From Takakia lepidozioides (lineage: Eukaryota > Plantae > Bryophyta): 64,000 nucleotides of DNA. Position numbers and translations under genes: made by a program. The number at the start of each line of letters is the position of its first letter. The stretch's first letter is position 1. Shown here piece after piece: positions 7,390 through 59,615 of the stretch. Under the pieces are notes generated by a model. That model was not told where the DNA came from. It did not search any database and worked only from the letters and a program-made list of their open reading frames with translations. Location of the stretch: contig CM060731.1 of assembly GCA_030704615.1 (NCBI GenBank), forward strand, positions 25,234,001 through 25,298,000, read 5' to 3'.

Positions 7390-7860
7390 TATGCATATTA
7401 CCATCCCGTATTCAGGCCGTCACCATTCATCCCATTCTAGAAATGCATAGGAATCCTATGCATGTTATCATGTGATATTTCGTCGTCACCATTCATCCCA
7501 TTCATCCATATCCATGTTATCATCCGTATTCGACATCACCATTCACCACATTCATCCCATCAATCTCAACCCTATCCATATTTCATCCATAGTGCGCCAT
7601 CACCATTCATCCAATTCAGCACATTCATATCATCCTATCCATGTTATCATCCGTATTCAACATCACCATTCACCACATTCATCCCATCCATCTCAACCCT
7701 ATCCATATTTCATCCATATTGCGCCATCACCATTCATCCAATTCAGCACATTCATATCATCCTATCCATGTTATCATTCATATTCGACGTCAACATTCAT
7801 CCCATCCATTCCAACCCTATCCATGTTTCATCCATATTTCGTCGTCACCATTCATCCCGT
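7390..7860 (+). repeat. CATCC/ATTCAT-rich tandem array (~127-bp period with ~40-50-bp subunits) inside MULE-1
   Basis: CCATGTTATCATCCGTATTC-like unit recurs at ~7512, ~7639 and ~7766; CACCATTCATCC recurs throughout. Confidence 0.85.
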
Positions 7861-8487
7861 GAGAAGAAAACTGTGGATGCACTGCATGAAGTGAAAAATT
7901 GTTGTGGGCACTCTATAGGGTAAGGGCATCCACCACTGTGTAAGGGCATTCACCATTCCACCAGGGTAAGGCCCCGATGTGAAAGATAACCAAGGCTCTA
8001 GCACAATAGGATCCACAACATTCATGGACCCGATATATGAAAGTGAGCCCCGATCTCTAGCAGTGATCGGAGATAGTTCCCTGGCAGAAAGGGTAAGGCA
8101 AGGACCCTAGGCTTATGGGTGACACCATCAATGTGACCCCATTCAGGGGCAGTACTATCCCATGTTACATACCACTTCTTTCACTGGACCTAGGAAGATT
8201 ATGAGTATGCACTTACATTATAATGAAGGAACACATCAAAGCAAGATTTTCATGAGTTACAACAGATTTGGCCTCCTCTGTTCTGTGTGCAGACTGCCAT
8301 GTGCCAACCTACATACATTGATTGGCTCATTCATAAAACTTTACTTTGTAGAGTGAAAAAATTGAGTGTACATCATAATGCTCACAAATGTTGTAGACAA
8401 CTTCCTAAAGAGGCAGAGAAGGCGGCCACCAACACCCTTGACATGAAAGGGATCATGCTACAGTCTCATGTCCCTGCCTTGAATTTC

Positions 8488-10377: not shown

Positions 10378-10884
10378 AAAGAAGTACCATTGGGGATTCA
10401 AGCTCCACAAAAAAGAATAGAATCCCAGAGAGTAAGTGCTAGAACACTGTCAACAAAATCCAGCCATGATAAAAGTCTGAGCCTAACTTCTACACGGCGT
10501 CTCTGCATGCATGCTAGGAACACTGAACTCATGCCTTAAGTTCATGAAGTTTTTGCCTCGGTTGTCCCACCATTGACTGGGGTCAGAAAAGTATTCATTC
10601 CACAGCTTCTCCTCGTTTTAGCTGTTACCTGGTTCTGGATACTTCCCTGTTGTCACATTGGCAGTACCATGTCAAAGTCGCTCCAAACTATCAAAGGCTC
10701 ACTCAACCAGCTAACTTGCATAATTCAACATGAAAACTTAGGGCCGATTCTGATAAGAGGGAAAAACAGGGTGAAATGTGTTGAAGAAGGTGTCTTCATT
10801 ACCAGTGCCTGAGTTTATCAATGTGCCGCTGCTGCTGCGGCTTCTAGTTGACCATCTACCCATGCATGTTTCTTGTAGCTATTG

Positions 10885-11225
10885 ATCCATCTGGAACATT
10901 TCCAGCTTTGGTGATGCAACCATGCACCTCCGATGCCCTTTTCCAGGGCTACCAGGCTTGCACACGCACTGCAAACGCACACAAACATGATGTGGTCGAA
11001 CTTCACCCCTTCCCCCATCATTTGCTTTCAGGTCTCCAAAGCCCCATACAATGCCCCTGCTCTGCACACCCTGCAAGCATCACATTCCACAACACTACAT
11101 CTCATTCAGCCATAGTGTTGAACACTCCCTTGGCATCCTCAATGCTACCATATTTGGCATACATGGCCACCAGAGCAGTGTTCAGGATGACATCTGGAAC
11201 AATTGCAGATTTGATCATGTCACCA
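10885..11225 (-). pseudogene. PLS-class PPR gene fragment inside MULE-1
   Basis: Translates to IVPDVILNTALVAMYAKYGSIEDAKGVFNTM...MMGEGVKFDHIMFVCVCSACASLVALEKG, with stops/frameshifts. Confidence 0.85.
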
Positions 11226-11561
11226 GGGAGTAATTTCATTCGCAAATAGAAATCCTTGACTCTGTCACTTGTCCACCCCTTGGGGTTAATCAGGAGATCT
11301 GCGTTGGCTAGTCTAAGGGCGATATTGGGGCCTACACAATTCTGGAAAAACCAGACGTTTGATGTTTATTTTACTTCTGCACCAGCTGATATCCTGGAGA
11401 CATACACCATCACGATACATGTCAAACGCATGCACAGTGGCAAGTAAAGTGCATAATGCAAAAAATTACCATTTGAATTCAACGAAAATAAGACGATTGT
11501 TGACTCACAGCGCTTTTTTCAGCCCTTCGTCAAGCCTGCAATGACATACAACAAGTTCATG

Positions 11562-14500
11562 TCAGAAAAACCGGCAAAGGGGTTGCCCAAGCAGAGGTAG
11601 GATATGTAGAATTGTTAGATGCAAAAAGAGGGCATTCAGTATTAAAGGGGATGTGTGTAAATGAGGAGGCTCCAACTTCATCTTCTCTTCTGTTCTGTGG
11701 AATGTGCGCCATGAAACAATATCCGCACATGCACTCGTTGATGCTCCCATAGTGCCCACCTCACTGCCACAGACACCTTTCAATGTTGGCCAAGGCAGAG
11801 CTCTGGGTGAAGGAGCTCCGAGGGCGTTCCTTCCTCCAAAACCGAGCAAAGGGTTCGCATGCTGTACATGGGGTCTGGACGACACCATTCGTGTTACTGC
11901 AGGCACCATAACAGGCACATCGAAGCGTTTGTCAGAAGGATCCCTAATGCCCAAGGGGGCACATGCATGTGTAGCGTTGTTCATGCACTACAGGCAAGTG
12001 CACCTGTTCAGTCACAACCTCGCTTGAATGCAATTCGATTTCCATTTGAGTAAGAGCACCTAGTTCAGTGGCATTAATAACAAGGAGGGTAAGGTCTGTG
12101 GCGGCGGTGTCATGGTTACACAGACGACCGTCATGTACATGGTCGGGCATCATCGGCCCCGATGCGTTCATGTGCAAGCTTCCCTTCCACTCCAGGTGTG
12201 GGCTCAGCGTCTTGCAACAGCTTTGTTGGTGACCCGAACATCGGAGAAGTAGGCGTGACTGGAAGGGGCTGATTGTGAGCACGGTGCACGACACCACAAT
12301 CTACTTAATGAGAAGGCAAAGCCTGAGGGGGTGTTGTGACTTCACCATAATTGGAAGTCAAAACCATTCATTCGGGAATGATCGAGGTTGCGTCTAATAT
12401 CCCCCACCCGCTGCACATCAGCAATTGCAGCCATGTACGTAGCCTGCAATGCTTCATTCCCATGGTCCACATCACCTACAAAATGAACAAAACAAACAAT
12501 GAGTATAATGGCTCTATGTAAACAATGCATGGCATGATGATGCAAGGCAAATGCATTCAGGCAAAGATGGGAACAATATCACCTTCCGCGCTGAAAATCC
12601 AGCCCATGTCAATGTCTTCATGGTGTTTTAGGGTATTCTGGAAGTTCCCGATTTCTTCATGTCTCTCAGAAAGGATGCTTGTGTCAATACACCACAACGT
12701 GTCAAAACCCTTTGGATTGCAGATGGCAAAATCCCCCAAAGCTCTCCATCGAGTCATGTCTATGAATTCTTGCATATCCTTGTTCACACCATCTGCCCCG
12801 CTCGGGTCGGAATGCAACAAGTCCTCCACGCATTTGTTCGTCTCATGCATCAGATTAACTGGCAGGTATGCAAACAGGCAGGGACCAACCGACAAGAAAT
12901 TAGCTGACGCATGCTTGAGCATGGAATTGCCCTCTGGCGTTCCAACAAGTTGAACCATGACATCATGCAACCGTGTGTTTGTCGATGAAAAAACTGCATC
13001 AGTGCTACTGGCATATGACATCCAAATAGTCCTCAACACCTGCAAAATCAGCGGGCATTTCATAGGGGGCCCTGCCTTGCGGTACGATGTAAAGACTTCT
13101 CGTAGGAGCTTCGATTCGTCATCCGAGTGTTTGAAGAAAGTGGGTAGGATATCCCTTATGAACAATGGTGTAAAGAGGGGACCAACCCCACTGATGCACT
13201 TCATTTTCACGATGCCAATTGGCATCCCAGGCAGCCAACTGCTCTTGAACATACTGGTTTCTGATGGACTCCAACTCGGCTTGTCTTGTTTTTTTTTTAA
13301 ATTCAAAGCTTGAGAGGGCAGACTTGCATTCATGATAGGATGTAATGGCACTGCACTCATTGTAGACAGCTCCATAGTCAAAGGCAACGCCAGGCTTCTT
13401 TGCCCAGATAGCCATGGTCTTGAAGACATCGTCCTTCTCCTCCTCTGGTGTTGCATGCTGGTTTGCAGGGAAACAAATACAAACACATTAATATAAACCA
13501 CAACATTTCCAGCGATTATGTTGCATATTTGACCCCAAACATGAGCATGTGTGAGTGAAATGGAAAGGGAAATGAATATGTGCATGAAATATTGTAGTGT
13601 GAATTCACTTGTCGATTGATCCATCAATGGCCATATGCTGCAACCAAGTTACATTAAGCAAAGCCCTCCGCGTCAACAAGGTGCCTGAGGGACTGTTGGA
13701 ATTGAGGATTTTCCATGCTTGGGAAGGGTACATGAAGCAATCCGTAGTTGAGAAGGGTGTGAAGGCCAGGACACCGAACAGGTGCAGGTTTTTTTGGAAC
13801 CTCCATGGATGAAGTTAGAGATTTTGACTTGTTGGTAAAATATAAAATGGCGGAGGATCAGGAGCCCGTGCCCCACTGACCACTTTGTTGCTTGCTAACG
13901 ATTTGGATGCAAGCAACTTCCCTGCCTTTGAACCCCCGGTTGGAGCCCCTTTCCCAGAGTTTTCAGGAGGAAGATTACCTGATGGCAATTTTTTTCCATG
14001 GCCTACATGATGGGAGGAAAAACCCTTCCAAGTTTGCAAATGTAGAGCCCCCATGCGTTTCGGCGGTTCATCAAATGTGTCATCATCGGAGTCACCTGGA
14101 AGCTGACATGATGTGGAATGTGTCTGATAGGAAGCGTCGTCGGCGTCTGATGACAAGTCCTGGACTACCTGACTCTGCGACCTCATGGACCTCCTTCCCG
14201 ATTTCCGCTGGAGATGCTCCATTTCTTGGGACACGTCCGCCTGGGAGGCCTGGCCCTTCTTCCTATTTGTGGTTTTGCGAGGTGGCATATGTCCATGGCG
14301 CCTGAGGACATCTTCCATAATACCCTTCTGGCTTGGTTAAAAAACAGGGTACATTTTGAGGACACCTTCATCTTCCCCATGCTTCATACAACCATCCATC
14401 GTATGCAAGTTCAGTTCTTTTTATCGGCAAAAAACAGATCACAGTGTATGCATCTGTATTGTCGTCTATTAGACGCACCAGGTTCATGGACCCTTGCTCT

Positions 14501-14636
14501 CGTGTAGGCCTCGCATATGAGGGACTTGTATTCATCAGTATCATATGTCTCACGGTATTCCCTCCGGTTCTCTATCATTCTGCTCTCCTTCATCATGAAT
14601 GCGCAGTCTCCCAACAATTGCAGCGCCAGCGTACAA
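11562..14636 (-). pseudogene. MULE-1 accessory gene: N-terminal C2HC zinc finger, K/S-rich linker, long C-terminal region of unknown function
   Basis: Chain of minus-strand ORFs (14411-14617, 13815-14318, 12557-13627, 11944-12297, 11562-11984). Repairing a 1-bp frameshift at ~14413 gives YRCIHCDLFFADKKELNLHTMDGC, homologous to the MULE-2 ORF at 56503-57207. Confidence 0.6.
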
Positions 14637-15664
14637 ACCTACACAAACAATGCCTAGCATAAATCCACAGCAACGACACTTTTTTGAACCCTGAAATTGC
14701 ATGCATGGGCATTCAACCCCCTAAAACCTCTAACAATGGAGTGCATGAGCCTAAACCCTAAACCCTAAACACCAAAACAAAATGAAATGACTTCAGATAA
14801 TATGAAATATCTCCGTATGGAGAGTGTTCATGGCCGCATATGTGCACATCCCTGCAGCTCACAACTAAACTATGGAAACAACACTTTATCCGGGTCTGCT
14901 CTTTCAAATACCAAGCAAATGAAACATGCAATAAGTTGCCCTCACCTACAATTTTTGTAACACACAAAAGTAACAAGCGTCTTATCCTAAACTCCATATG
15001 AAACAAAGTGTTCACCTCAGCTTCATGTCAATGTTTGCATGAAGTGCCCATAAGTACCAGACAGCCCCACTTTTGCAGTTTCCTAAGTACCGTAGTGAGA
15101 AAACGATACAGGAACGCGGGTAGTGTGCATTAAGGCTAGCACACACGTACTTCTCTAGTTCACTCATTTTCCACTGCTATTGCCCTGATTGATCTGTTCC
15201 CTCATTTTCAGTATCTGTACTTCTGGAATGTCCCACATTTCTGAACCTATGCATACAGTATATGTGAAAGTACCCACAAAGAAGGGAACCTGCGAAGATG
15301 ATTGGGTTTCGGATGCTCGATGCAGAACTCACTCACTTGCAAGGTAAATCATGGGAGAAGAGCACAATGACAATCCGGATAACACAGAAGAGCAAGATTG
15401 AGGTTGTGGAGCGATAATAAGGACCTGCACGCAATTCAGATTTGGAGCGGAAGCGGTGCAACCATTGAAGACGGCCACAACATCCTGCTTCGTATGCCGA
15501 TTCTCCATTCCTATCCACAAACTCGACCTGCATGACGGGACGCGGTACGCCAACACCATCAAGCGCAACGATAGCGACATTTCGTGATGCCTGCCAACAA
15601 TGCAACGTCCTGTCTCATCTGGTACGTCTATTCCACCTACCCTCATCATTTTACATGCAATGCC

Positions 15665-15924
15665 ATACCATGTATGCAATGGACGCAAGCATGTGGCATG
15701 GGGAGGATGAAGGCATGCAGGGGGGATGGGGGACGATGCCATGCATGAGGTGAGGATGGGAGGCGGGATGGGGATGGATGAGAGGACATGTGTCATGTCC
15801 TGGTAGAGGGTACATGAGGCGCGGGAGGGGCTGCCGCACGGTATGCGGGCGATGGACGCGGGTGTGGGCGGGGGGTCCACGCTGGCTGAACCGGCCCCCT
15901 CGCATTGAACTCCAGGGCCATCTA
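15665..15924 (-). repeat. MULE-1 right TIR
   Basis: Inverted copy of 3301-3569. Confidence 0.9.
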
Positions 15925-45320: not shown

Positions 45321-45721
45321 GCCTCTCATTTTACAATAATTGGGACGTTATAGCGTACGCGCGAGCTGACTGGTGGGCCCCGCGCACGGACGCCCGGCTC
45401 CCCCCACCCGCCGCTGCGCGCGGTCGCCCACCTGCTGCCGCGGCCCCACCAGCCGCGCCCGCGGCAGCCCTGCCCGTGCTCCGCCGCGCCCCCAGTCTGG
45501 CACGGCCAGTCCGCCCGCCAGTCCGCTGCCCGTGAGTCTAGTTCCCCTCAGTCCGCCAAACCGCCAGTCTGTTGTGCACGCCAGTCCGCTGCCAGTCCCC
45601 GCAAGTCCACCCAACAGTCCGCTGTGCCCGTCTGCTGCCCCCCAGTCTGCCAGTCTGCCAGTCCGTGCCGGCCGAAGGATCTGGATCGTCCATTCTGCGA
45701 AACCCATCCGCGCCATCCATG
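45321..45721 (+). repeat. MULE-2 left TIR
   Basis: Inverted near-copy of 59192-59615. Confidence 0.92.
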
Positions 45722-46008
45722 CCAGTCCGCTGTGCCAGTCCCGACTAGTCCACCCAACAGTCTGCCCGCCAGTCCACCGCCCATGAGTCTGCTTTCCTCC
45801 AGTCCACTGATGATGCCGCATCTGGACCGTCCGTTCGCAAATGCCATCTGAGCCCTCCATTTTTAGGGCATGAATTCTAAGCCGCCTACCACTTGCCAGC
45901 AGCCGCGAACGTGCGCACTGATGCTCCTTGCACGTTGTCCATCATGTCCAGTGTACTGCGGCGCGTTTCTTGCAGGTTCTGAAGCGCGTCCTCTGTACTA
46001 TACAGGGC

Positions 46009-49000
46009 ATGGACGTGGAAGTAGAAGGTGATGATATACTAAAAACGAGATGCTGGATTATACGGCCTCTTCGACAAAGTTTGCAAACACCCAAACCAGG
46101 ACCCTTCAACATGAATGACCTCCAATGGAAGAGAGACACGCAATATGGTTATATGGGTGCCAGACAGAATGTTCTGAAGGCCTGCATACCATAGGATAGA
46201 GTTGATGACTTTCTCCTTGGAGAGGAGAGTTTGGTGGACTACCCCACTCAGTTTTGGGTGAATGTCCATACTAAAGTGCAACCCGGCATGCTAAAAGAGC
46301 CGAGAGCCAGCAGTTCTCTGAATAGTATCATGTGTGCTCCATCCTCATCGTCCTTTTGTAGTCTGATTGCATGTCTGTTGCCATTTTTTGTACCCACATT
46401 TTGTGATTTCATGCTTCCAGAAGTCGATGGATATCCATTGTGATTTTTATGTCCAGATATCAATGCTGCTACGGTCCAGATGACAAGTGCACCAACAATG
46501 CGATAGTGGAGGATCCCAAACTGAAACGTGGAGGACCTCTTGTGGGTGCTGGAACATCTCACATTCATAAATGCCCAAGGAGAAAGAAGTTGGAATATGG
46601 AGAGTCTTACAAGCGTGGTTGCCAGTGCTGTTTCAAGGTCCAGCAATGCTATCTCGCCCCCGATATTTGTGTCTTCACATACTACAACAATATGGAGCAT
46701 ACAGACGCGAAATGGAACGCCTGTCATGGGAAGTCCGTTGAGTTCAGGAACACTCGCCACGCCTATGTACCACACATTAGCGAGAAATTGAAAGCATGGG
46801 TCATGGAGTGTCTGTGCTGAGGCCTGTCAGTCGCCCAAATCATGATGGAACATAAAGAGCACGTCATGAACAACACCGGGTTGGGGGATGCATGGACATG
46901 GGACGATTTTTTGCTGGAGCAGGATGTGCGCAACCTGGCCGAGAAATGGGCGTAGCAAACGTTCAAAAAACATGCCAACGATGCGGAGAGTGTCCGCATG
47001 TGGAAAGACCAGAACCCGAAATCGGTCTTCTTCTATCAAGAGGAGAAATTGGCGCCAACATTCAAGCACTACGATGGCGACTTAACATTCACAATCGGCA
47101 TACAGACTGAGTGGCAGAAGAAGCGAATGCTTCAATTAGGCCATGCCTGTATCGTTGCATGCGATGCAACCTTTGGGACAAATCACCACAAGGTACTTTT
47201 CATCCCTTTCAGACATTCTGCATTTGAACAGTTCCCATTGTACACGTTGATGGTCTTCGACGAGTGGCTTAACGGTATACCAATTGCGTACATCATATGC
47301 GCCCGTGAGCAGATAACAGACCTGGTGCCGTGGATGGCAGCCTTGCGAGACTCTCTCCTCGCAGAAATGCCGGACTGGCGACCCAATGCCTTCATTGTGG
47401 ACGATGCCGATGCCAAAATAAACGCCATTACGTAAGTTTCACGTACCCTCCTGTACACTCGCGTGCAAGTCCGTCGTCTACGTCCATTGTTTGTCTCTTC
47501 GGCAAGTCCCCTGCCATACAACGTCTGCTCCGACCTCAGTCTGGTCCAGCAAGTCCGCTGGCAGGCAGGTCCGCTGCAAGACTCACGTGCGCGAGTCTGC
47601 TGCGACCTCAGTCTGGTCGAGCAAGTCCGCTCACAGGCGAGTCCGCCGGAGGGGACTGTTCGCAAGCAGTCCGCTGCAAGACACACGTGCAAGAGTCTGC
47701 TGCGACCTCAGTCTCGTCGAGCAAGTCCGCTCGCAGGCGAGTCCGCCGGAGGGGACTATTCGCAAGCAGTCCGCTGCAAGACATGTGCGCAAGTCTGCTG
47801 CGACCTCAGTCTGGTCGAGCAAGTCCGCTCGCAGGCGAGTCCGGTGTCGTGAGGGCAACACTCATGGTAGGTCAGAGTGGGCGAGTCTTCTGCCTGAATC
47901 CGTTTGGAACAGACAGGCAGACCAGTCAACTAGACAGTCTACTGGGTTAGTGCCCAAGTCCATCGGCGAAGTCCTCTTTGAAGTCTCTCATGTGGGCATG
48001 TGTACTTTGCATGGCTGTTTTTCGAGGAGTGCTCATTTTCATGTGCCTTTGGCATGTCCGGCGGGCTTGGGTGAAGCAATCATGCGCGAAAACCAAAGAT
48101 CCTATCATTGCCGCAAATTTGCTGAAAGATATGGGAGACCTCATGTACTATAGAGGTGGACCAATCAATCCCAAAGAAGGTCTTGCATGGGTAGCAACAA
48201 CACTCCGACACATGAGAAAGAAATATCCGAATGGGCATGAATTTCTGGACTACATCGATAAGGAATGGCGTCCTAAAATAGCAATGTGGTGTACAACAGC
48301 TCGCCATGTTCCGCATGCCAGTCAAGACACCAATGCTAGCATTGAGGCATACCATGGAAACTTGAAGGCAAGACTGAGGATGGGGAAAGCCAAAATGACT
48401 GGGCGTAGAGTGGATTGGCTCATATGGGAACTCACAGGCCGTGTGCTAACATACTACTGGTATGCAATTCACCTGAAGATGCACGGATTCATAAGGAATG
48501 ACAAACAGGAGAAGTACATGTCCAGTTCTGTGCTTGCGGCACGCGATATCCCAGCTTGCAATGTCAATCTTCCATTCCATCCTGGGCAACCAGCCTATGT
48601 TCTAAGCACCAATCACCCAAACACAATTTACATTGTTTACAACCCCGGATGCGAATGGGCTTCTTGCACTTGCCCATGGGCAATGAAGGGCAATTTGTGC
48701 AAGCATCAAGTCCGAGTCCTGAAGTTGCTTCATCCACACGTGCAGGATGGACTCATAGTGCGCGCTTGTGGCACGGCGCTGGGAACCATTCATGGAGGAT
48801 TGCATAATGTGTTTAGGATTCATGCAAGTATCGGCGACGAAGAGGGTTTGGGAAATGCAACAGAGGGCCCTTCCACAGATGACTTCCCCTATGATGCGGA
48901 GCCTGTCCTCGTACCATCCTCCATAGATGAAGAATTTGCAGACATACTTCGCATTGTTGGGGACGACAAATACCTGCAGAAACATGTTTTGTCTTTTCAT

Positions 49001-49261
49001 CGTATCTGTAGGGGGCAACTTGTTGATATTCTCGCCAAGAGTGCTGCAGTAATGCTGCACCTTGCGGCATCAAAGAGCTTCCATCCTGTAAATGACAACA
49101 ACAATATGTCGCTGAAAAGGAAACGAGATTTCGTTGAGGCATGGAAAACGCGACCCAGGGTCTTACGCAAAACAGGGAAGAGGGTTGGTGCCCCAACACC
49201 TGCAGCACACATATACTCCACAATCCGGAGAGTCGCAAACCGTATACCAGATTTAAAGTAG
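46009..49261 (+). pseudogene. MULE/SWIM transposase of MULE-2 (premature stops)
   Basis: KRGCQCCF, GIQTEWQ, ACDATFGTN, FDEWLNGIPIAYII, FIVDDADAKI, CLWHVRRAW, DTNASIEAYHG, SWIM CTCPWAMKGNLCKH; stops at ~46194, 46820 and 46935; intron positions match the MULE-1 transposase. Confidence 0.92.
47523..47845 (+). repeat. ~100-bp AGTC-rich tandem array inside transposase intron
   Basis: GTCTGCTGCGACCTCAGTCTGGTCGAGCAAGTCCGCT starts at ~47523, 47595, 47695 and 47793. Confidence 0.9.
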
Positions 49262-49373
49262 AGTAGGAAATGTAAGAAATGGTACAGTATCATTCTCCCC
49301 ATGAAATAAAATTTCAGCGGTACGATTGCATGTGTACCAGACGTCCAACCTGCCTGCCAACCAGCCTGGTAAA

Positions 49374-49501
49374 CCAGTCTTCTGGCGTCTGAACCAGTCT
49401 GCTCAATCAGTCTTCTACCGTCTGATCCAGTCTGCTCAACCAGTCTTCTGGTGTCTGAACCAGTCTGCTCAACCACTCTTCTGGTATCTGAACCAGTCTG
49501 C
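49374..49501 (+). repeat. 33-bp tandem repeat x4 (CCAGTCTTCTGGCGTCTGAACCAGTCTGCTCAA), with CAGTCT-rich sequence continuing to ~49920
   Basis: Direct reading of the sequence. Confidence 0.9.
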
Positions 49502-50247
49502 CGTACCAGGCTGGGACTCAGTCTTCAAACAGTCTGCTGTGCCAACCTTCTCTTGAGCAGACCAGTCTCCCGGTTCTGAACGTGCCTGCACTTGGCTGAC
49601 CAGTGAGCCTCATGTGGTCTGCTCATCAGACTGGCCATTCTCAGCACGGTGGACTCTCATTACTCTGCTGACTAGACTTGGCAGTCTACTGGCCAATGCC
49701 ATCCGCCTGTCCTATACCACTCTGGCGACTCTCGACAGTCTACTCACCAGTGCAGACTCATGGTTCCCAATCGCATCTGCCAGTCTGCCGGACTGGTCCC
49801 AACTCCTCAGTCTGTCGGACTCTCGTCAGTCTGGCGACATTGCCATCTGTCTGCTCACAAGCCTAGGCATACCCTCTTCCCGTACTCTGGCAGTCTGCTG
49901 ACTCTTGGCTGTTTGCTGACCAGTGGACTCCATTGGTATGTTAAACAAAATGATTGTGTGTGCAGAGGTAAGTCCGCTTAACCACATGCAGTGAATTGGT
50001 CACAAATCTACAGCGACTACTCCACACTGCACTCATATGTGACCAATAGGATGTGTATACAAAGTCATATTTTATTTCGTTGTAAATGCTCAAAAGCATG
50101 CTTTCAATACACATAAATTGAACATAAATCTGAAATCACAGAGGTGGAAGACGGCAGGGCACAACCTGTACGGCGTCATTGGAAAGAAGCGACTGGGCAT
50201 ACTGCTCCCCTGCTTGAATGTCAGTATGTCTGTGCTGCTCAGAGCGG

Positions 50248-50865
50248 TTAGTCTGGTGCTCTGCTCGCCGCTATGGTCAGTTTGCTGTCGAGTCTGGTGG
50301 ACACTCTCGTGTGCGGGGGGAACGGCATGTTGGCCCTTAGTCTAACATGAACAGGGCTAATCTGTCTTTCCACATCATCCTCAGGGGGGCTACGTTCTTC
50401 CACAAAGTCTTCGTCTTCGGAGTCGACACTCTCCACCTGCATGTTCACCTGCAAACTATAAGAGTATAGCCTTGTCCAAAATGTAACGTGTTGCATAAAA
50501 CAGGGAATCTCCAAATTGACCGTGCTAGTTTCCATACAGTAGTCCACCGTACATGTACAGTGGAGGGCCGTTCAACATTACCATTCTAAGGGCTTCATCC
50601 TAAGTTATGTCTGCAAGAAGTGAGGCGAGAGATGCACGTTACTCACCATGGGATAACCCAACAGTGGATCCCGGTCGTTGGCAAGCAAATGCAATTTGGC
50701 AGTTTCCACGAATTGGAGTCGACCTCCATGGCAGTCGTTGCAGGGACACTTTATCTTTGAAATACCCAGTCTAGTTGCACGTCGTTCCTCGATTTGCCAA
50801 AGTCCTGCGTCAGTGTGGGGCACCGCAGTGCGGCGCCGGGTGTTTCTAGTTCCGGCCTCTCTCAT
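50248..50865 (-). CDS. Small spliced gene with CACTA-type transposase-associated domain
   Basis: KIKCPCNDCHGGRLQFVETAKLHLLANDRDP matches the CPCxxC...HL pattern of Pfam Transpos_assoc; donor GTGAGT at ~50646; acidic downstream exon. Confidence 0.6.
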
Positions 50866-51091
50866 CCCCCACGAAACGCTTCTGGGTTTGGCTAGTTTTT
50901 GAAGTGGGAAGTCAGCGAGTGCTCGGATGTGGGGAACCTACGTTTGTGCTTGCAGGCGTTGGAGTATTCGTATGGCGGGTCCACCTCCCCTCTGTTTCCT
51001 ACATGCGCTCCTTCTGTTGTTTGATCAGTAGATCATGGTAGTCTTGTTTGAGGTCGATTACTGCGATTTGAGCGACGAGGAGGAACCCGCC

Positions 51092-54000
51092 ATGGCACGG
51101 ACATGCAAGGCCTCTACACCCGACACCCCTCCACGCACTGCCTACGAGGAAGAGCGAGAGAGGCGCATAGCGGCCAACAAAGAGACGTTGGCTCAGCTGA
51201 ACATTGGGAGCGTTGCGCGCAGGTGAGCAGATCACCCTTGTCCTTAGTATGCATGCTACACAGGTAGTGAGTAGGGGTTTCCCACCACATTAGCCTACTG
51301 TTTTTCCCTCCCATAGGTTTCATGGTGATGGCACTTTCACGATCGCCTTTTGTTTAGGGCAAGATTCACACAGGGTTTTGGAAATGTGTGCGCAACATAG
51401 CTAGGAGTGTACAACGGCCGACTAGGAGCTCCAAAGTTGTGTGGAACGGGCCTCCTCGACGAAGTGGGCGCTTGAAAGAACTAGCATTACCTTCGATGGC
51501 GGAGGAAGAGCCCGAGACTCCCCAGTCGGTGGGCTCTGAGGCAGAGGAACTCGACGAGCGTGATCAGGAGCTCGATGAGGATTACAACATAGATGACGAC
51601 GACGATTCGGAGGAGGAAATGCACGAGGACATAGAGGAGGACGAGGATGGAGATGATGTGGACAAGGTATCAGATTTGGAGAACTACATCAGTGGTGCAT
51701 GTGGACTGACCGAGCCTCCCAATGCAACGCATGCTCCGAGGGCACCAAAACGGCCAGCTCCTCTTCCACGAGAGGTAAGTGGGCATTTGCTGTACTGATT
51801 TCTTAGGTTTGTGGCAGGATTTGCATCTTCTTATTTGTTGTTCCTTTTGGTCCCAGCAGTTTTTTCCATTTTCCACTAGCAGGATGAAGCACCACTTTCT
51901 TGCCCTCTATACCTCATGATACAAGGGTTTATCTACTGTCTATTCCTTGGAACCCAAATCTGTTATTGAAGTCTTCTATACATTTTTCCATTTTGTGCCA
52001 TGAGAAATGCAACTCTGCAGATTGCTGACTCCCTCACAGGAGGTTCAAACTTGTGATGGCCTGTCTTAATACCCAAAAAGCGCAAAGGGGGTTGTGGGAG
52101 GGAGGGACCTGCACATGTAGGGGGCTGCATATTGTGGTGTCATGTTGCAACAAGAAAGAAATTGTAGTGGGAGAGGAGGAACCCCCAGGAGCACGATGGT
52201 AACCGCCTCATCAGCCAGCCATGTCCGAGAGGGGGCGCTCACGACTCTTCCTCCCCCATCTTCCTGCCCCCTCTATTGTCAAATGTTGATAATATGTGAA
52301 GCCATTATCAGCCATTATCATATTGTACTCTCATTGATATGTACGATGGTCATCGGGGCCAGATTGTGCCTACAAGGGATTCCCCAAAGAACCCCGAAAG
52401 AGGGTCGAAACATACAAGGAGGACTTTCCCAGTGACGTTTGGCGTGTTCAATGGATCAGACCTAAATGCATTTTGGGTGCGATTTCTGCTGCATTCGGTG
52501 TATGTATATTATAGAGCGCGTTTTTTGTTGATGTATCCTACATGATGTTCATGCTTTATCTTCCTACATAACTTTTTCCCACATGTTGATTTGCAGGATC
52601 CAGTGAGAAAGAAGAAGGGAGTTGCTCCGGCAGGTGTCTTCAACCATCCATCCCCACGTCTTCAACCAACCCCGGATGGAGGAGGCCCTCCCTCCTTTCC
52701 ACGTAACACTGGTGCGTTTTATCCCCTTGGCATTCAGAGGTATGCACAGTATGAACAATAGACTGCTCATGTTCCAGCCGCCCCTGAAATTCACCCGCCC
52801 TTTTCTCAGTCGTACCATGCAAACAACCCGTCAGGGGAGAACCGGTCATGTGCAGTTCCGTGTGGGGCATTTCCGCAAACTGGGGAAGCACAACATGCTC
52901 CTGTTCAGCATGGGCACTACCACGAAGGTGTGTGGTACCCTCACCCCATCCCTCCCCCACCTGCGCATCCTCCCCAGGCAACGTATCCCAGAAGCCCCAT
53001 GTATAGTGCGCCGTTGCATGGCCCTTATTCCAGGCAGCCCATAGCTTCACCCAATTGCAACGCTTCGCGGCCTCTTCAATTCCCAAGCTCACCAGCTCCG
53101 AGCACAGGTTATGTTCCTGCCCACCCCACACCCCACGTTGGTGCGTGGCAGGGTTCATGTCCGCCCGAAGGGCCCCATGTTGCAGGTTGTGAGGGAGGAG
53201 AGGAGGCCCGTGATTCCAATATGACTCCAGATGCGCAACATTTGACTGGCAAGGACAGAGCCAATTTTTTGCGCAAGGCGAGGAGAGTAGCACGGAGAGG
53301 GTTGAAGGAAACGTCTTGTGCAAATGTAGCTGCTGGGCAAAAGAGATTCATAGTTGCGTGTGGCAAAAAGGGCCCATGCGGGGATGCACGAATGACTGGC
53401 TGGCAGCCCTGCGAGGGCAATGCCAACGTGTGCTGGACTGTTCTGTGCCCATCCATCTTCAACCTCAAAGTCTGATTGACGAGGTGGGTGAACTATTAGC
53501 AGATGATTGGGAATATTTACCTCCTGGGATAACTGGCGCCCAACTTCGAACTGAGATTGGAGGCGTCATTAAATACCAGCGCATCAAACTGTTTAGAAAA
53601 GTGTACTCCCGTGGCAAACCTAAGCCCCACTATGTTGCGGACAAGACTTGGGCAGAACTTGTGAGGCATTGGAACACGCCCGAATGGCAAAAGAGTCGTG
53701 ATAATGGCAAGCATGCACGGGGGCATATTGGTGCCCCTTCGAGATCTGGACGCAGTGGCCTTAGCGGCGTTGAGGAACGTCTGGTAAATCTGCCTGTCTC
53801 ATGACATTGCCAATATATTCAGGTAGTGAGGTGTCTTGTCATTTGTATCTTACTCTTAGAGGATGGCACTAATATTCCCATATCCTGTCCATGTGTAGGC
53901 TAAGACAAGTGGTCGTCCTCCACTTCTATCCGAAATTTCGGGGAGCAAGAATAGCAAAGGGGTATGGTTCTGATTCAGCAGGGGCCACCCGATCTGTAAG

Positions 54001-55354
54001 TAACTAACCCACCTGCATTTTTTGCAATGATGTGCTTGTCAATTATTTATGGTTTTGCCTTCATGTGTTGTTGTCCAATAAATTACCTCGCATGGCTAGT
54101 GCGATAGATGTATTGAATCGTATTTGCACTCTTTTTGTGGCAGGGCCTTGGAGCATTGGCTTCTCGGCTTGATGGCTTGGAAGGATGGAAACATACAATG
54201 GAGGCCAGCTCAATGGAGCACAAATTGGAATTGCAGGTAGTGAAATCCATGTTTGCCACTGCAGTATCTAAGACAGACAAGTTCAACATGGCATTGGCAG
54301 CGAAGCTCGGTTTGGACCTGCCGAGGGATGAATCTCCATCAACATCAAACATTGTGTGTGAGTTGTCGCTCCCTGTTCATGGTGTTTTCCCACCTGCGAC
54401 TACTGTGGAAATGACAAGTACAGGTGAGCAGCCTCCTAGCAGTGGAGGCAGTGGACAAAGGAAAGGGGGCAGTATTGTGGAAGAAGATGCCACAGGTGAG
54501 GACAAAGTTCAGAACATGGCATGTGACGATCCTTGCCTTAATTATGGTGCCAATGATGACCTATCCCCCCTTATTGAGAAGGGAGTGCCTGTACTGGAGG
54601 ATCACACCGGCAGTGAACTTAGACAGAGTGCCCAAGACATAGGGGCAGGGGCTAAGGGCACAGGAGTGGTTATTGTTGGGGCAGGGAAGAACATTGATTC
54701 AACAACAAAATTGCCCGTTGTACGGAAGGTAAGTACTCGTGTTCCTATATTCTTGTGCTGTTCCAAGTCGATTATGCAATACCTGCAGGCCGTTCATGAC
54801 TTCTGTGTACATGTGTGGGTTTCTATTGATTCAGAAGCCACCAAAGGAAATTGTTGCGGTGAATATGAGGAAGAAGTCCACAAGACTTGCTGCCAGCAAC
54901 GTTGATGGGAGCCGTATGGGAAGCTTCAAAGCGTCGGCACCTATTGTAAGTTTTCCTTCGTGGAAGTACATCCGTATTTTGTTTGTAGGGCTATATGATG
55001 GCATCTCGCGTTTTCCCTGTCCATAACTGTTGCATGTGCATAACAAATGACAAGGGCACACATTGGTGGTGTTGGCTGTCCCAGTTTCAGGTTGGTGACA
55101 AGGTCACAATGTTTGACCCCAATGCACCCAAACGGAAGGCAGGTGTGGGCCATATATTGGGCATGTCGACTGACTGGCTGGCTTATGTCGTTCATGCCGA
55201 TTATCATGTTGTCTCGGTTGAATCAGTACATGGGGCAGATGTTGCTCTACCATACCCCAACAATGATGTTAGGCCTCCCATTGTGATGCTCAGTGACACT
55301 GTAGGCAGCACGGCCCTGTGGTCTGCCAAGTTCCTCAAACTGACCCAAACATGA
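51092..55354 (+). pseudogene. CACTA TnpA-like gene (Ptta/En/Spm Transposase_24-like core and Tnp1/En/Spm-like C-terminal domain), multi-exon, frameshifted
   Basis: YEEERERRIAANKETLAQLNI N-terminus, acidic and Pro-rich tracts, KPHYVADKTWAELVRHWNTPEWQKSRDNGKHAR..GRSG, C-terminal VSVESVHGADVALPYPN..LSDTVGSTALW. Confidence 0.7.
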
Positions 55355-55929
55355 GGTTGTGGGGGATCCTCAATTTGAAGGCAATTTTGACTGAACGCCA
55401 CTTCATATCGATTTCACCTTTTTTTCGTTATTGTGCGCATCAATGTAGGATTTGGGTACATTGTGGGGTTGTGATCAGCAGTGCAGACTCTGCAATACTT
55501 GCATGTTCAGACTAAACTTTATTTGGGCAATGAAGGGCGCACCCAACTTTGAAGCACCCTTGCATTTGGTCATTCTTTCTGTTGTTCTGGCCATGCTTAG
55601 TCAATTGTACATGTCATGAGCAGGTTGTTGCCGCAGTGCTTTGGAATTGTGTTTATGTATATGAGTCATATTTCACATGGACTGTGAAACTGACAGTGTG
55701 GACAGTATCACGATTTGTGATATGATCATGATGCCTATGGAATAATTGTGTACACCATGACGTCACAAATATGTGAAATCAACCGTAGCTTGCCTGTGGC
55801 ATCTTCCACATTTTTGTGGAATGACCTACAACATCAGCAGTAGAATATTTCAGACCCACTATGATATGCTCCTGTGGCTATGTGGAATGACCTACAGTAT
55901 AGGCAGTAAAATACTACACACCCACTCCA

Positions 55930-56400
55930 TGCAGATTACGCCACGTGCCGTCCTCTCCAGAATACACGCGTTGCCCATACCGTTGCCCACATGTCGTCAA
56001 GCCCAGGTAACAGGGTGTCGCATCATTTTCCCATAGGTGTGGACAAGTCCACACCCTTTGTACGTTTAGGATCCACGTGGCGGTGTTTGCCACGGAACAC
56101 GTGGCCCCCAAACTTGCTGAAGCTGTGAAAACAGCCAGTGGATGGTCTCACACCGAATGGCTTTTTTCATACCCACATGCCACGCCAGATGTCCGCTCCA
56201 CATAAGTGCACATCGCCTCTTTGTCTCCATACACGTGTCATCCCCACAAAAATACACGTGTTGCACACACCGTTGCCCAGATGTCGTGAAACCCTGGTGA
56301 CAGGCAGTCGCATGGTTTTCCCGTAGGTGTGGACAAGTCCACACCTTTGTACATCTACAATCCACGTGGCGGTGTTCGCCAAAGCACACGTTGCTCGTGG
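55930..56400 (+). repeat. ~300-bp direct duplication rich in CCAC/CGTG
   Basis: CCGTTGCCCA.ATGTCGT...TAGGTGTGGACAAGTCCACAC...ATCCACGTGGCGGTGTT occurs twice. Confidence 0.75.
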
Positions 56401-56502
56401 AAAAAGCCATGAACCCCGTGAAAAAGGCCACCCGTGGACTTTTCCACAGGGCCACCCGAGAGCCAGGCCGTCCACGGGGTGTCCGAAAGCACTCGTCGTT
56501 TC

Positions 56503-57207
56503 TTACACCCACGGCAGGTGTGGCCTGGGGCGGATTCCACAGAAAAAAGTGTGAAAAAAACCGTGGAAAAAGCCATTTTTTCTTCTAGTGGTCTGCGTCT
56601 GCTGCGTAGACCGTCTCCCTGACACAACCCGTGACACTTCCCGACTGCCTTGGGGACGAGTCTGCTGTTGAGATTTCGCCCTCGCCTCCCGAGCAGACCT
56701 TGTAGCCTTTTCTTTTTTTTTCTTCTGGGCCCCATCACTAAGTTTCCTTTTTCTGGGAGCCACAGGCGATGGCGATGTCAGGTCATGCACATCTTGCATT
56801 GAAATATCCGAACCCACCCCATACCGTGCGCGCACCTCCGCCAAAGTGCGGGCCTTTGGGTTTGCGCCACGGAGTCTGGCGGTGGCCGCATTCACCACCC
56901 TCATTGAACTTTGAACTGGCCACGGCTTGAAGCCAGGTGGGATATAGCGCTTGTTTTTGCAACCCGTGTCAACACAATGGCGGTTTAGCTGCACTTTGTC
57001 CTTGATAATTTCACTACAGAAGGGACAGTGGAGCTTATCCTTCTGCCAGTTGGAGTCTGCAGGCTTGATTGCGCGGAGGTCTAAGAATGCTTCAACTATT
57101 TTCGCATCATACTCCTCAGGTGAGTACCAGTACCTTCGCTCCTTTATCTTGGACTTGTGCATGAAATGCAACCAGTCTGCTCCACCCTTTGCACAAACAT
57201 CCTCCAT
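56503..57207 (-). CDS. MULE-2 accessory C2HC zinc-finger protein with basic NLS-like tail (open ORF)
   Basis: CPFCSEIIKDKVQLNRHCVDTGC; PRKRK..KKKKEK; homologous to MULE-1 14340-14617. Confidence 0.7.
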   Translation of the reverse strand: MEDVCAKGGADWLHFMHKSKIKERRYWYSPEEYDAKIVEAFLDLRAIKPADSNWQKDKLHCPFCSEIIKDKVQLNRHCVDTGCKNKRYIPPGFKPWPVQSSMRVVNAATARLRGANPKARTLAEVRARYGVGSDISMQDVHDLTSPSPVAPRKRKLSDGAQKKKKEKATRSAREARAKSQQQTRPQGSREVSRVVSGRRSTQQTQTTRRKNGFFHGFFHTFFCGIRPRPHLPWV

Positions 57208-57569
57208 GGCTGCAGAATCAGATAAGAGCTGCAGCGGCAATGAGCGACAGACAGACTAAGAATAAGAAAGCAGAGAAGAGCGGAAAAGAGAATGGAAAGA
57301 AACCAAAGCACAAAGCACAAAGAGGAAAGCTCACCAGGCAACAGGCGACGGTTGTTGCGACGATTCGGTGCTCACGCGACTGTCCTCGCCTCGAAAACCT
57401 AACACGCACAAAGGACCAATGGGAGGTGGATAGTGCGAAAGAAGTCTAGTGGGAAGTGGACCCTGCATGTGCGGAGTGACGTGGCGAGATTTCACCGGTG
57501 CCCCTTTTTGGCCGCCATCGCATTAATTAGTTGCAGACCCCTCACACGTGCTGGCGGTATGCCACTGCA

Positions 57570-58400
57570 CGGACAGACTCGTATGCCACTGCACTGACAG
57601 TCTAGCAGACGGGATGAGTAGGACTATCGTCAGTCTGCCGTCGTCGCATTCATCAAGTCCAGCAGACTTACTCCTGATGACAAAGACGGCCGAGCAGACC
57701 CAGTACCCTCCACAACAGACTCATATGCCACCGCAAGGACAGACTGACGACTGAGGTTAAGCGGATTGACGAAGAGACTAAGGCGAGTGCGGAGTTTGGT
57801 GCGGAGTCTGATGACATGCCGCGACGTGACTGGGCCTTCTTACTGCCGTCACTACTTTATTGCGTCCAGCAGACTTAAACCTAATGACAAAACAGACCCA
57901 CTGCAAACAAACTTGCGCAACAATAGACTCGTATGCTACTGCACGGATAGTCCAGCAGACGAAAGGTTCAACAGACTGACGAAGAGACTGACGCAGAGTA
58001 ATTTGCGCGACAACAGACTGATTTCTAACAGACTAATATCCCAAAAGACAAAGTATCCCCTAGGCGGCCGGGTGATACGGGAGTAAACCGTAAACCGCGT
58101 CCAGCAGACTTACACGTGATAATAATCACGGCTCAACAGACCCAGCAGACTCACGACAATGTGGATAATTAAAAGGTAGTAGTTAAACGGACTCATATCC
58201 GAAGAGACGGACTTCCAGCTGACCAACGGTTCAACAGACTGACGAGAGAAGAGACTTCGGGGATAAGACGAGAGAAGACACTTTAGAATTCGGCAGGCAG
58301 TGACGGCCCAGTAGTCCAGTGAAGAACAGACTCACGCCACACCAGACTTGTATCATTACAGACCAACAGACCAGCAAACCAGACTGATATCCCATTAGAA
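57570..58400 (-). repeat. CAGACT/GACT-rich degenerate array (AGTC motif on minus strand)
   Basis: Many CAGACT/CAGACC copies; partial repeats such as AGACTCGTATGC.ACTGCAC and GTCCAGCAGACTTA. Confidence 0.7.
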
Positions 58401-59191
58401 CCACGCTTGGCGTCGCCGTCATGCCGTGATTGCATTTCATCCGTCCAATAGACTTGCATATGCCAATACTCATGGCACAACACACTGCTTAGAGAAAGTA
58501 CTGACAAAAACGCAGTCGAAGAGCCTGTTAATCCACGTGCATTTGCAGTCGTAAGGACCTCGAACATCCACAAGCAACGTGAATCCACATCTCTCAGGCT
58601 ACGTCTCCTTTCCCAGTGTCCAGTTTTCAAGGAGACGGTAGTGGTTGAGATGTGATGTTTCAGGAGGTGCATCTAGATGTTTGAGGACCTTCGGACTGGA
58701 TCCTGTTCCGTTCACACTCTCCGCAGTTCCCAGACATGTGGTGGCAGAGACGTCCTCCCCTGAACAGTCTCATCGGTGGACATAAATTCTGCAATGTATA
58801 CATGCCCCCACGTGCATATGCTTCCGTGATTTCCGCTATCGTGTTACCAATGGTTTCCTGCTCCATACGAAGGAGCTCGGACTTGGAGACACACCACAAA
58901 CCATAAACGCATGCAATTTTTCCACATATCGTCCTAAAAAATAAGCACGTCAACACAAAACAAAGGCAAAAATAGTGGAAGCATATGCACGATGGTGGCT
59001 GTAGAGCCCCGCCAGCCCTCTCATGTTCAGGCACACCCTTCATCGTCATTAAAATCGCCATAAACAAGAACAACAGCCGCATGCGTACAAAGTCACCTCC
59101 GCAACATTGGACAACAAAGAGCCGCAAGAAGAGACAACAAGAACGAGTGGGCGAGTTCGTGGCAGGGTGTTACGATCTTCCATGCCCTAAA

Positions 59192-59615
59192 CATGGATGG
59201 CGCGGATGGGTTTCTCAGAATGGACGATCCAGATCCTTTGCCCGGCGTGGACTGACAGACTGGGGGGCAGCAGACGGGCACAGCGGACTGTTGGGTGGAC
59301 TTGTGGGGACTGGCACAATGGACTGGCATGCACAGCAGACTGGCCGGCAGACTGGCAGTTTGGCGGACTGAGGGGAACTGGGACCACGGGCAGCGGACTG
59401 GCGGGCGGACTGGCCGCGCCGGACTTGGGGCGCGGCAAAGCGCGGGCAGGGCTGCCGCAGGCGCGGCTGGTGGGGCCGCAGCTGCAGGTGGGCGACCGCG
59501 CGCAACGGCGGGGGGGGGGGGGTCCGGGTGGGGGGAGCCGGGCGTCCGTGCGCGGGGCCCACCGGTCAGCTCGCGCGTGCGCCATAACGTCCCAATTATT
59601 GTTAAAATGAGAGGC
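59192..59615 (-). repeat. MULE-2 right TIR
   Basis: Inverted copy of 45321-45721. Confidence 0.92.

What the first reader, a model, noticed from the sequence alone, without database searches (positions are those of the whole stretch)
56503..57207. Same C2HC zinc-finger accessory gene in two MULEs with unrelated TIRs
MULE-2 YSPEEYDAKIVEAFLDLRAIKPADSNWQKDKLHCPFCSEIIKDKVQLNRHCVDTGC aligns by eye with MULE-1 YDTDEYKSLICEAYTRARVHEPGASNRRQYRCIHCDLFFADKKELNLHTMDGC (after one frameshift repair at ~14413). Both are on the minus strand near the right TIR, convergent with the transposase (mudrB-like position), and followed by a basic low-complexity tail. The TIRs show no visible similarity, so the gene looks like an ancient, fast-evolving core component rather than chance cargo. 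The MULE-2 copy is still open while its transposase has stops.
Basis: partly seen in the sequence, partly recalled or inferred. Interest (0 to 1): 0.82.

Follow-up and report, generated by a model that had tools for sequence, protein, structure and literature searches.

The report
Moss MULE helper gene with host twin
Two unrelated-looking Mutator-type transposons in this moss window carry the same second gene, and the reported zinc-finger ORF is only its first exon. A well-conserved, uncharacterised host gene of mosses is its relative, so the gene moved between transposon and host, in a direction I could not settle.

Summary
The ORF at 56503-57207 (-) and the frameshifted stretch at 14340-14638 (-) are homologous: BLASTP E=1e-5 on one piece, and a local score of 79 against at most 60 in 9000 shuffles.

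The "C2HC accessory gene" is only exon 1 of a roughly 650-850 aa gene. The gene has a CxxC-x12-H-x4-7-C finger, a basic NLS-like stretch, a CPG motif, an intron, and an all-helical C-terminal domain with no known fold.

- **MULE-1** keeps the whole gene (12560-14638) as a pseudogene.
- **MULE-2** keeps only the first ~200 codons.
- **A MULE-2-like contig (L001)** has the full gene, with the MULE-2 motif CAGTCYGC packed into its intron.

Ka/Ks between MULE-2 and L001 is 0.28, so the transposon-borne gene has been under purifying selection.

The nearest database relatives of the MULE-1 copy are single-locus host genes (Ceratodon M758_5G026400 and three Physcomitrium paralogues). They sit beside PEPcase/Cullin genes, without TIRs or a transposase, and carry an EAR-like DLNLNL motif.

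Whether the host gene was domesticated from the transposon or captured by it is unresolved. It is not VANC, since DUF1985 and DUF287 are absent. The zinc fold was not confirmed.

Other notes of this scan mention zinc-finger accessory genes in MULEs elsewhere in this genome. I did not test those.

The parts
45321..59615 (+). MULE-2: 14.3-kb element with long TIRs and a 9-bp target-site duplication TATCAATAA (45312-45320 and 59616-59624)
   Evidence: Inverted repeats I1/I5/I9/I10; ends and TSD read from the sequence; weak MULE domain and a SWIM finger in its transposase
56503..57207 (-). MULE-2 accessory gene, exon-1 remnant (234 aa ORF). Homologous to relatives only over 56608-57207; the 3' end is unrelated sequence
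   Evidence: 60-64% identity to P0001 over about 200 aa; the nucleotide match to L001 ends at 56659
56959..57027 (-). Putative C2HC zinc knuckle (CxxC-x12-H-x5-C) of the MULE-2 copy
   Evidence: Invariant C61, C64, D70, K71 and conserved H77 in alignments A2/A5; fold not confirmed
45964..49258 (+). MULE-2 transposase region, several ORF pieces with at least one in-frame stop
   Evidence: tblastn against MULE-1; PF10551 MULE E=0.0016 and PF04434 SWIM E=5e-4; stop shown
45507..45765 (+). Left subterminal cluster of the MULE-2 motif CAGTCYGC. The mirror cluster lies at 59283-59412 (-), with internal arrays at 47561-47843 and 49395-49898
   Evidence: 26 of the 28 window matches lie in MULE-2, against 3.3 expected in the window; TRF arrays
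3301..15924 (+). MULE-1: 12.6-kb element with long TIRs (one 113-nt stretch is 100% complementary); no clear target-site duplication
   Evidence: Inverted repeats I2/I6/I7; ends
12560..14638 (-). MULE-1 accessory gene, full length but decayed. Pieces: 14414-14638, 14340-14420, 13818-14336, 13600-13800, 13122-13487, 12560-13159. It has a frameshift near 14414-14420, an in-frame stop at 14337-14339 and further frame changes
   Evidence: Colinear tblastn with P0003/P0004/P0009/P0013/P0008 over host residues 1-594; alignment A4
3833..6437 (+). MULE-1 transposase region
   Evidence: tblastn against MULE-2, 33-65% identity; PF10551 only E=0.19

Best explanation
The reported ORF is the first exon of a second, non-transposase gene that belongs to a clade of moss Mutator-like elements. 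The full protein is about 650-750 aa in the transposon versions. It has an N-terminal region with one CxxC-x12-H-x4-7-C knuckle, a lysine/arginine-rich stretch that looks like a nuclear localisation signal, a short CPG motif, an acidic run next to an intron, and an all-helical C-terminal domain of roughly 300 aa that ends in an LWC...DMGW motif. The gene lies near the right end of the element and converges on the transposase. Shown: both elements carry it, MULE-1 as a full-length pseudogene and MULE-2 as a 5' remnant. A MULE-2-like relative (L001) has it complete. It has been under purifying selection in that lineage. It is homologous to a conserved single-locus host gene of mosses. Inferred: the two MULE families inherited it from their common ancestor. 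Also inferred: the protein is a nuclear factor that targets DNA or chromatin and acts on the element's own non-coding DNA. In the MULE-2 lineage the candidate targets are the CAGTCYGC arrays in the subterminal regions, downstream of the transposase and inside the gene's own intron. This would resemble VANC of VANDAL elements or TnpA of En/Spm, but with an unrelated protein. The direction of exchange with the host gene is unresolved.
For: Homology of the two window copies. Only shared coding region besides the transposase. Larger gene: in L001 the two called ORFs are in one frame, separated by about 250 nt with GTAATG...AG ends. The profile search found 658-846 aa proteins that begin with the same domain. 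MULE-1 is colinear with them over residues 1-594, and its break at 13600/13445 falls where the host intron lies. The second ORF of L001 matches the MULE-1 ORF 12560-13627 at E=2e-5. Selection: Ka/Ks=0.28 with Ks about 1.06 over 198 codons, MULE-2 against L001. Link of L001 to the MULE-2 lineage: 9 CAGTCYGC matches against 0.27 expected, 5 of them in the putative intron, and the same motif marks MULE-2. The MULE-2 family is multi-copy in DNA run X1, with about 500 contig pieces at 80-100% likeness. Regulatory character of the family: the host relatives carry a conserved SPDLNLNL EAR-like motif.
Against: There is no direct evidence of zinc or DNA binding. AlphaFold gave pLDDT 30-55 for the finger region, and Pfam gave only sub-threshold hits. 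MULE-1 has no subterminal motif comparable to that of MULE-2, so pairing of motif and protein is seen in one lineage only. The same motifs could be transposase-binding sites. Linkage of the gene to a MULE transposase outside this window was not shown, because L001, L008 and L009 are short contigs. Both window copies are defective. The closest named relatives are host genes, so the gene may simply be retained captured cargo.
Confidence: 0.6

Rival explanations
1. Domestication: the gene arose in, or was long resident in, the MULE lineage. One copy close to the MULE-1 type was exapted in an ancestor of Bryopsida mosses and became the conserved host gene (Ceratodon M758_5G026400; Physcomitrium LOC112277411, LOC112293720, LOC112282765), which gained a C-terminal extension with an EAR-like motif.
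For: The non-host lineages (MULE-1, MULE-2/P0001, P0005, P0006) are far more diverse than the tight host clade. The host family has no detected relatives outside mosses and no Pfam domain. The host locus is syntenic and lacks TIRs and a transposase. The intron position is shared.
Against: The tree of 120 columns is unresolved and unrooted. Host versus non-host is one split at 57/91 support, which fits either direction. Faster evolution of transposon genes could explain the greater diversity. P0005 and P0006 have no genomic context.
Confidence: 0.45
2. Single old capture: an ancestor of both MULE families transduplicated the complete host gene, intron included, and the element has kept it since. 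MULEs are known to do this.
For: Gene capture by MULEs is well documented (PMC6446971). A host homologue exists, and the MULE-1 copy is 44-49% identical to it in the finger region. The shared intron fits DNA-level capture. A single clade of the transposon copies is not rejected (AU p=0.42).
Against: Captured genes in Pack-MULEs are usually fragments and decay. Here a full-length gene was kept, with Ka/Ks 0.28. The transposon versions lack the host's C-terminal extension. The host gene appears restricted to mosses.
Confidence: 0.4
3. Two independent captures of the same host gene by unrelated MULEs ('chance cargo').
For: The best tree places MULE-1 on the host side and MULE-2 on the other side (66/95).
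Against: The position, orientation and 5' gene boundary are the same in both elements, and their transposases are homologous. MULE-2 is only about 21% identical to the host proteins, far below the identity among host orthologues, so its capture would have to be extremely old or from an unseen source. A single clade is not rejected.
Confidence: 0.07
4. Chance resemblance of two cysteine-containing ORFs.
For: The alignment is short and the by-eye match covers only about 55 residues.
Against: 0 of 11000 shuffles reach the observed score. Homology extends colinearly over about 600 residues through third-party proteins.
Confidence: 0.01

Closest known systems
mudrB (MURB) of maize MuDR
   Same: A second gene of a Mutator element, placed near the right TIR and convergent with the transposase gene. 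It is not a transposase, and its biochemical role is poorly defined.
   Different: MURB is reported only from Zea (own knowledge; PMC6446971 describes it as a protein of unknown function needed for integration). I had no MURB sequence to compare. The gene here has a host homologue in mosses and a zinc-knuckle N-terminus.
VANC/VANB of Arabidopsis VANDAL elements (anti-silencing factors)
   Same: Accessory genes of MULEs. In VANDAL21, short element-specific motifs in tandem arrays lie in non-coding regions and in the introns of the accessory genes (PMC5735166). In L001 the accessory-gene intron is packed with the MULE-2 motif. The proteins combine conserved domains with fast-changing regions.
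   Different: VANC carries DUF1985 and DUF287, and neither was detected here. VANDALs lack long TIRs, while these elements have TIRs of several hundred bp. No effect on methylation was shown here.
Uncharacterised moss host genes: Ceratodon purpureus M758_5G026400 / KC19_5G024800; Physcomitrium patens LOC112277411, LOC112293720, LOC112282765
   Same: True homologues over the finger, basic stretch, CPG motif, intron position and helical C-terminal domain. The MULE-1 remnant is 27-49% identical to them over host residues 1-594.
   Different: They are single-locus and syntenic (next to PEPcase/Cullin), with no TIRs and no transposase, and are highly conserved among mosses. They have an extra C-terminal extension of about 200 aa with an EAR-like DLNLNL motif.
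Classical C2H2 zinc fingers and their C2HC variants (for example the FOG-type CX2CX12HX5C; own knowledge)
   Same: Ligand spacing CxxC-x12-H-x4-7-C. Faint hits to zf-Di19 (E=0.046) and to a ZNF473 finger (E=0.77).
   Different: A single finger only. All profile hits are below threshold, and the beta-beta-alpha fold was not recovered by AlphaFold.
TnpA of En/Spm (CACTA) elements
   Same: A non-transposase protein encoded by the element that binds short subterminal repeats (own knowledge). MULE-2 has such subterminal repeats in inverted orientation.
   Different: No sequence relationship. MULE-2 separately contains a weak Transposase_24 (TnpA-like) ORF at 53214-53801, which is an alternative candidate binder of the motif.

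Membership tests
Mutator superfamily (MULE) element | Long terminal inverted repeats | tested here: met
   MULE-1 arms near 3301-3569 and 15665-15924; MULE-2 arms near 45321-45765 and 59192-59615
Mutator superfamily (MULE) element | Target-site duplication of 8-11 bp (usually 9) | tested here: inconclusive
   MULE-2 has a 9-bp TATCAATAA on both sides. MULE-1 has no recognisable duplication
Mutator superfamily (MULE) element | Transposase with a MULE (PF10551) catalytic domain and often a SWIM finger | tested here: inconclusive
   PF10551 E=0.0016 (19.3 bits, cut-off 27.6) in MULE-2 and E=0.19 in MULE-1. SWIM scores 19.9 bits against a cut-off of 19.6 in MULE-2
mudrB-like accessory gene | Second gene near the opposite TIR, convergent with the transposase | tested here: met
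   Both copies are on the minus strand, 1.3 kb (MULE-1) and 2.4 kb (MULE-2) from the right end, with the transposase on the plus strand
mudrB-like accessory gene | Sequence similarity to MURB | not tested
   No MURB sequence or profile was available in the tools used
VANC/VANB anti-silencing family | DUF1985 and DUF287 domains | tested here: not met
   No Pfam hit to either domain in the window ORFs, P0001, the second ORF of L001, P0009 or P0013. Domain content of VANC is from PMC5735166
VANC/VANB anti-silencing family | Element-specific short motif arrays in non-coding DNA and in introns of the accessory genes | tested here: inconclusive
   Present in the MULE-2 lineage. No comparable motif in MULE-1. 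Binding was not tested
Classical-type C2HC zinc finger | Conserved CxxC...H...C ligands with classical spacing | tested here: met
   C61, C64 and H77 are conserved in all rows that cover them, and the fourth Cys lies 4-7 residues after the His
Classical-type C2HC zinc finger | Beta-beta-alpha fold or a significant profile match | tested here: inconclusive
   AlphaFold pLDDT 30-55 in this region. Pfam zf-Di19 E=0.046 and PDB ZNF473 E=0.77
Pack-MULE-type captured host gene | A host homologue exists outside the element | tested here: met
   Syntenic host genes in Ceratodon, Physcomitrium and two further assemblies
Pack-MULE-type captured host gene | Captured piece is a fragment evolving without constraint | tested here: not met
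   The full-length gene is present in MULE-1 and L001. Ka/Ks is 0.28 between MULE-2 and L001
Exapted (domesticated) transposon gene | Host copy is immobile, syntenic across species and conserved | tested here: met
   PEPcase is adjacent in 3 of 4 loci and Cullin in 2 of 4. No TIRs and no transposase were found. The N-terminal domain is nearly identical among mosses
Exapted (domesticated) transposon gene | Host clade nested within transposon-borne diversity on a rooted tree | tested here: inconclusive
   The 120-column tree is unrooted and poorly supported. Host versus non-host is one split at 57/91

The most novel reading that the evidence does not exclude
A conserved, uncharacterised moss gene family with an EAR-like repression motif (Ceratodon M758_5G026400 and three Physcomitrium paralogues) is an exapted Mutator accessory gene rather than an exapted transposase. 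Its transposon-borne relatives would then be sequence-specific regulators that evolve together with element-specific motif arrays. That would be an anti-silencing or self-regulation system analogous to VANC, built independently from an unrelated zinc-knuckle protein, in bryophytes.
Probability: 0.3. Interest if true: 0.75.

Novelty: new variant of a known kind. Interest (0 to 1): 0.55.

Why it matters
Accessory genes of Mutator elements (mudrB, VANB/VANC, MutB) are few, restricted to particular lineages and mostly not understood. This one is shared by diverged moss MULE families, has been under selection, and has a conserved host counterpart in the model moss Physcomitrium. That makes it experimentally tractable by knock-outs, DAP-seq and methylome analysis.

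If the host gene derives from the transposon, it would be a rare case of domestication of a non-transposase Mutator gene. If the transposon took it from the host, it would be a rare case of a complete captured gene being kept functional. Either way it gives a first functional lead, transcription or chromatin regulation, for an orphan moss gene family.

Tried and rejected
- **Pfam** on all window ORF pieces, P0001, the second ORF of L001, P0009 and P0013: no family above threshold for the accessory protein.
- **ESM Atlas by features:** only generic C2H2-like leads for the N-terminus, and nothing for the C-terminal domain.
- **PDB by sequence profile:** nothing below E=0.77.
- **AlphaFold of the N-terminal 141 aa with a 3-row alignment:** pLDDT 51.5, unusable.
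- **AlphaFold of P0013 with 11 rows:** only residues about 190-600 were modelled with confidence, as helices.
- **Fold searches on that model:** Foldseek against PDB (best E=0.19), the shape search of the Atlas (TM at most 0.2) and VIA-align wide (Z at most 6.1, helical hairpins only) gave no fold assignment.
- **Word searches:** the MULE-2 ORF returned one relative and the second ORF of L001 only itself.
- **Two metagenome scans** (accessory gene, then transposase) found nothing.
- **The search of earlier findings by sequence** was blank.
- **VANC membership** was rejected because its domains are absent.
- **A MULE-1 subterminal motif** was looked for and not found.
- **The rest of the gene in MULE-2** was looked for by tblastn and not found.
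- **Expression:** no run on record as RNA holds the stretch. One run guessed to be RNA (X7) has contigs of 2063 and 1079 nt carrying a copy under 90% alike. This is a hint only.
- **Spliced models:** exons were searched separately by reference.

Full report
**Setting.** Earlier scan notes describe this genome as that of a moss. The window holds two large elements bounded by long inverted repeats:
- MULE-1, at about 3301-15924.
- MULE-2, at 45321-59615.

MULE-2 is flanked by a 9-bp duplication, TATCAATAA, the usual size for the Mutator superfamily. MULE-1 has no recognisable duplication.

The plus-strand coding regions at the left of each element (3833-6437 and 45964-49258) are homologous at 33-65% identity. 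Their Pfam support for a MULE transposase is weak: PF10551 at E=0.0016 and a SWIM finger just above its cut-off. The TIRs share only short G+C-rich matches.

**The observation.** The ORF 56503-57207 (-) and the MULE-1 stretch 14340-14638 (-) exist as described.
- The first MULE-1 piece alone matches the MULE-2 ORF at BLASTP E=1e-5.
- With an X at the frameshift, the local alignment scores 79. In 9000 shuffles the mean was 26.6 and the maximum 60. An earlier run of 2000 shuffles also had none reaching the observed score, although one came within a point.
- In an all-ORF tblastn between the two elements, this is the only significant match besides the transposase.
- Both copies are followed by a lysine/arginine-rich stretch.
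- MULE-1 has an in-frame stop at 14337-14339 in addition to the frameshift.

**What the ORF really is.** A word search found one relative, P0001: 334 aa, 60% identical, on a 2862-bp Logan contig, L001. On L001 a second called ORF of 411 aa follows in the same reading frame after about 250 nt. That gap starts with GTAATG, ends with AG, and looks like an intron. The C-terminus of the second ORF matches the MULE-1 ORF 12560-13627 (-), which lies just downstream of the MULE-1 finger, at E=2e-5.

An exhaustive HMM search with the N-terminal profile found proteins of 658 and 846 aa (P0003, P0004) that start with the same domain, plus two short relatives, P0005 and P0006. MULE-1 is colinear with these long proteins, in five pieces, over host residues 1-594. 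Its break at 13600/13445 coincides with the host intron after the YMERE motif.

The reported "accessory gene" is therefore exon 1 of a larger gene with these parts:
- a finger region,
- a basic stretch,
- a CPG motif,
- an acidic run and an intron,
- a helical C-terminal domain ending in LWC...DMGW.

MULE-1 carries all of it as a pseudogene. MULE-2 is homologous only to about codon 200 (56608), and I found nothing resembling the rest of the gene in MULE-2.

**The finger.** Across all lineages the invariant positions are two Cys in CxxC, a DK pair five residues later, a His twelve residues after the second Cys, and a Cys four to seven residues after the His. A few upstream residues are also invariant (R, Y, E, R). 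The spacing is that of a classical finger whose last His is replaced by Cys.

The fold is not confirmed:
- Pfam gives only zf-Di19 at E=0.046.
- The PDB profile search gives a ZNF473 finger at E=0.77.
- AlphaFold models this region at pLDDT 30-55.

The C-terminal domain is modelled as helices at pLDDT 70-88. It has no convincing structural neighbour.

**Is it maintained in the transposon?** Between the MULE-2 copy and L001, Ks is about 1.06 and Ka about 0.30 over 198 codons, so Ka/Ks is 0.28. The ratio is similar in the finger half and the basic half.

L001 belongs to the MULE-2 lineage by another criterion. The octamer CAGTCYGC occurs 28 times in the window, against 3.3 expected, and 26 of those are in MULE-2. 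They lie in both subterminal regions in inverted orientation and in arrays at 47.6 and 49.4-49.9 kb. L001 has 9 matches against 0.27 expected, five of them in the putative intron.

Contigs of a DNA run of the same organism give about 500 pieces at 80-100% likeness over 55800-58300, so the family is multi-copy.

**The host relatives.** A profile of P0003 and P0004 found eight proteins in all, the two queries included. The named ones are:
- Ceratodon purpureus M758_5G026400 (also KC19_5G024800 in the second isolate).
- Three Physcomitrium patens genes on three chromosomes: LOC112277411, LOC112293720 and LOC112282765, with RefSeq isoforms.

Their loci have PEPcase nearby in three of four assemblies and a Cullin gene upstream in two. 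No transposase and no TIRs were found. Their N-terminal domain is almost identical among mosses. They carry a C-terminal extension with a conserved SPDLNLNL motif, which resembles an EAR repression motif; that resemblance rests on my own knowledge. These are host genes.

**Direction of transfer.** A 120-column tree puts the eight host rows on one side of a branch (57/91) and the five others on the other side. MULE-1 is nearest the host clade, and MULE-2, P0001 and P0005 lie far away. Nothing is strongly supported. Holding the three MULE-type rows (MULE-1, MULE-2 and P0001) together is not rejected (AU p=0.42).

The tree is unrooted and transposon genes evolve faster, so it cannot separate two scenarios:
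- **Domestication of a MULE gene.** Points in favour: greater diversity outside the host clade, a host family seen only in mosses, and no known domain.
- **One old capture of a complete host gene.** Points in favour: MULEs are known to capture genes (PMC6446971), and the intron is shared.

Two independent captures are unlikely. The position and orientation are identical in both elements, and the transposases are homologous.

**Mechanism.** The best-supported reading is a nuclear protein that targets DNA or chromatin and acts on the element's own non-coding DNA. The grounds are:
- a zinc knuckle next to a basic stretch,
- motif arrays specific to the lineage, present even in the gene's own intron, as reported for VANC21 and VANB21 introns in VANDAL21 (PMC5735166),
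- host relatives with an EAR-like motif.

This is inference. The protein is not a VANC family member, because DUF1985 and DUF287 are absent. MULE-1 lacks an equivalent motif. The motifs could instead serve the transposase, or the weak TnpA-like ORF inside MULE-2.

**Verdict.** It needs three corrections: it is a much larger gene, the MULE-2 copy is truncated, and there are conserved host homologues. It is a new variant of a known kind, namely MULEs with accessory genes. The open question of domestication versus capture can be tested in Physcomitrium.

Noticed in passing
window 44288-44986 (+): An ORF with a clear Replitron HUH endonuclease domain (PF21859, E=3.8e-17, above the cut-off) lies about 340 bp outside the left end of MULE-2. 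This points to a Replitron-type element in a moss genome.
   Followed up: no
window 53214-53801 (+) and 50608-50937 (-): Weak hits to Transposase_24 (En/Spm TnpA-like, E=1.2e-4) and to the Transposase-associated domain (E=0.002) inside MULE-2. These could be a nested or captured CACTA-type gene, and an alternative binder of the CAGTCYGC motif.
   Followed up: partly
window 55942-56394: A tandem duplication of about 290 bp (82-83% identical) lies just downstream of the truncated accessory ORF. Many contigs of the DNA run pile up at about 56390-56560, which suggests that a different repeat abuts or replaces the 3' part of the gene.
   Followed up: partly
window 10888-11225 and 34454-34851: Several inverted-repeat pairs (84-91% complementary) link a segment inside MULE-1 with a segment 23 kb away. 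Probably two copies of another repeat, one of them nested in MULE-1.
   Followed up: no
L003/L004/L005 host proteins (alignment A4, columns about 868-880): The moss host homologues carry a conserved SPDLNLNL motif in a disordered C-terminal extension, resembling an EAR repression motif. It is absent from the transposon-borne versions as far as they could be read.
   Followed up: partly
window 28068-28757 (+): An ORF with a LysM domain (PF01476, E=1.3e-6). It is part of the EGF/LysM gene that another note records.
   Followed up: no
L008 (P0005), same sample as L001: A third, strongly diverged version of the finger protein (300 aa, His-to-Cys spacing of 7) occurs in the same plant metagenome sample as L001. 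At least two deep lineages therefore coexist there.
   Followed up: partly
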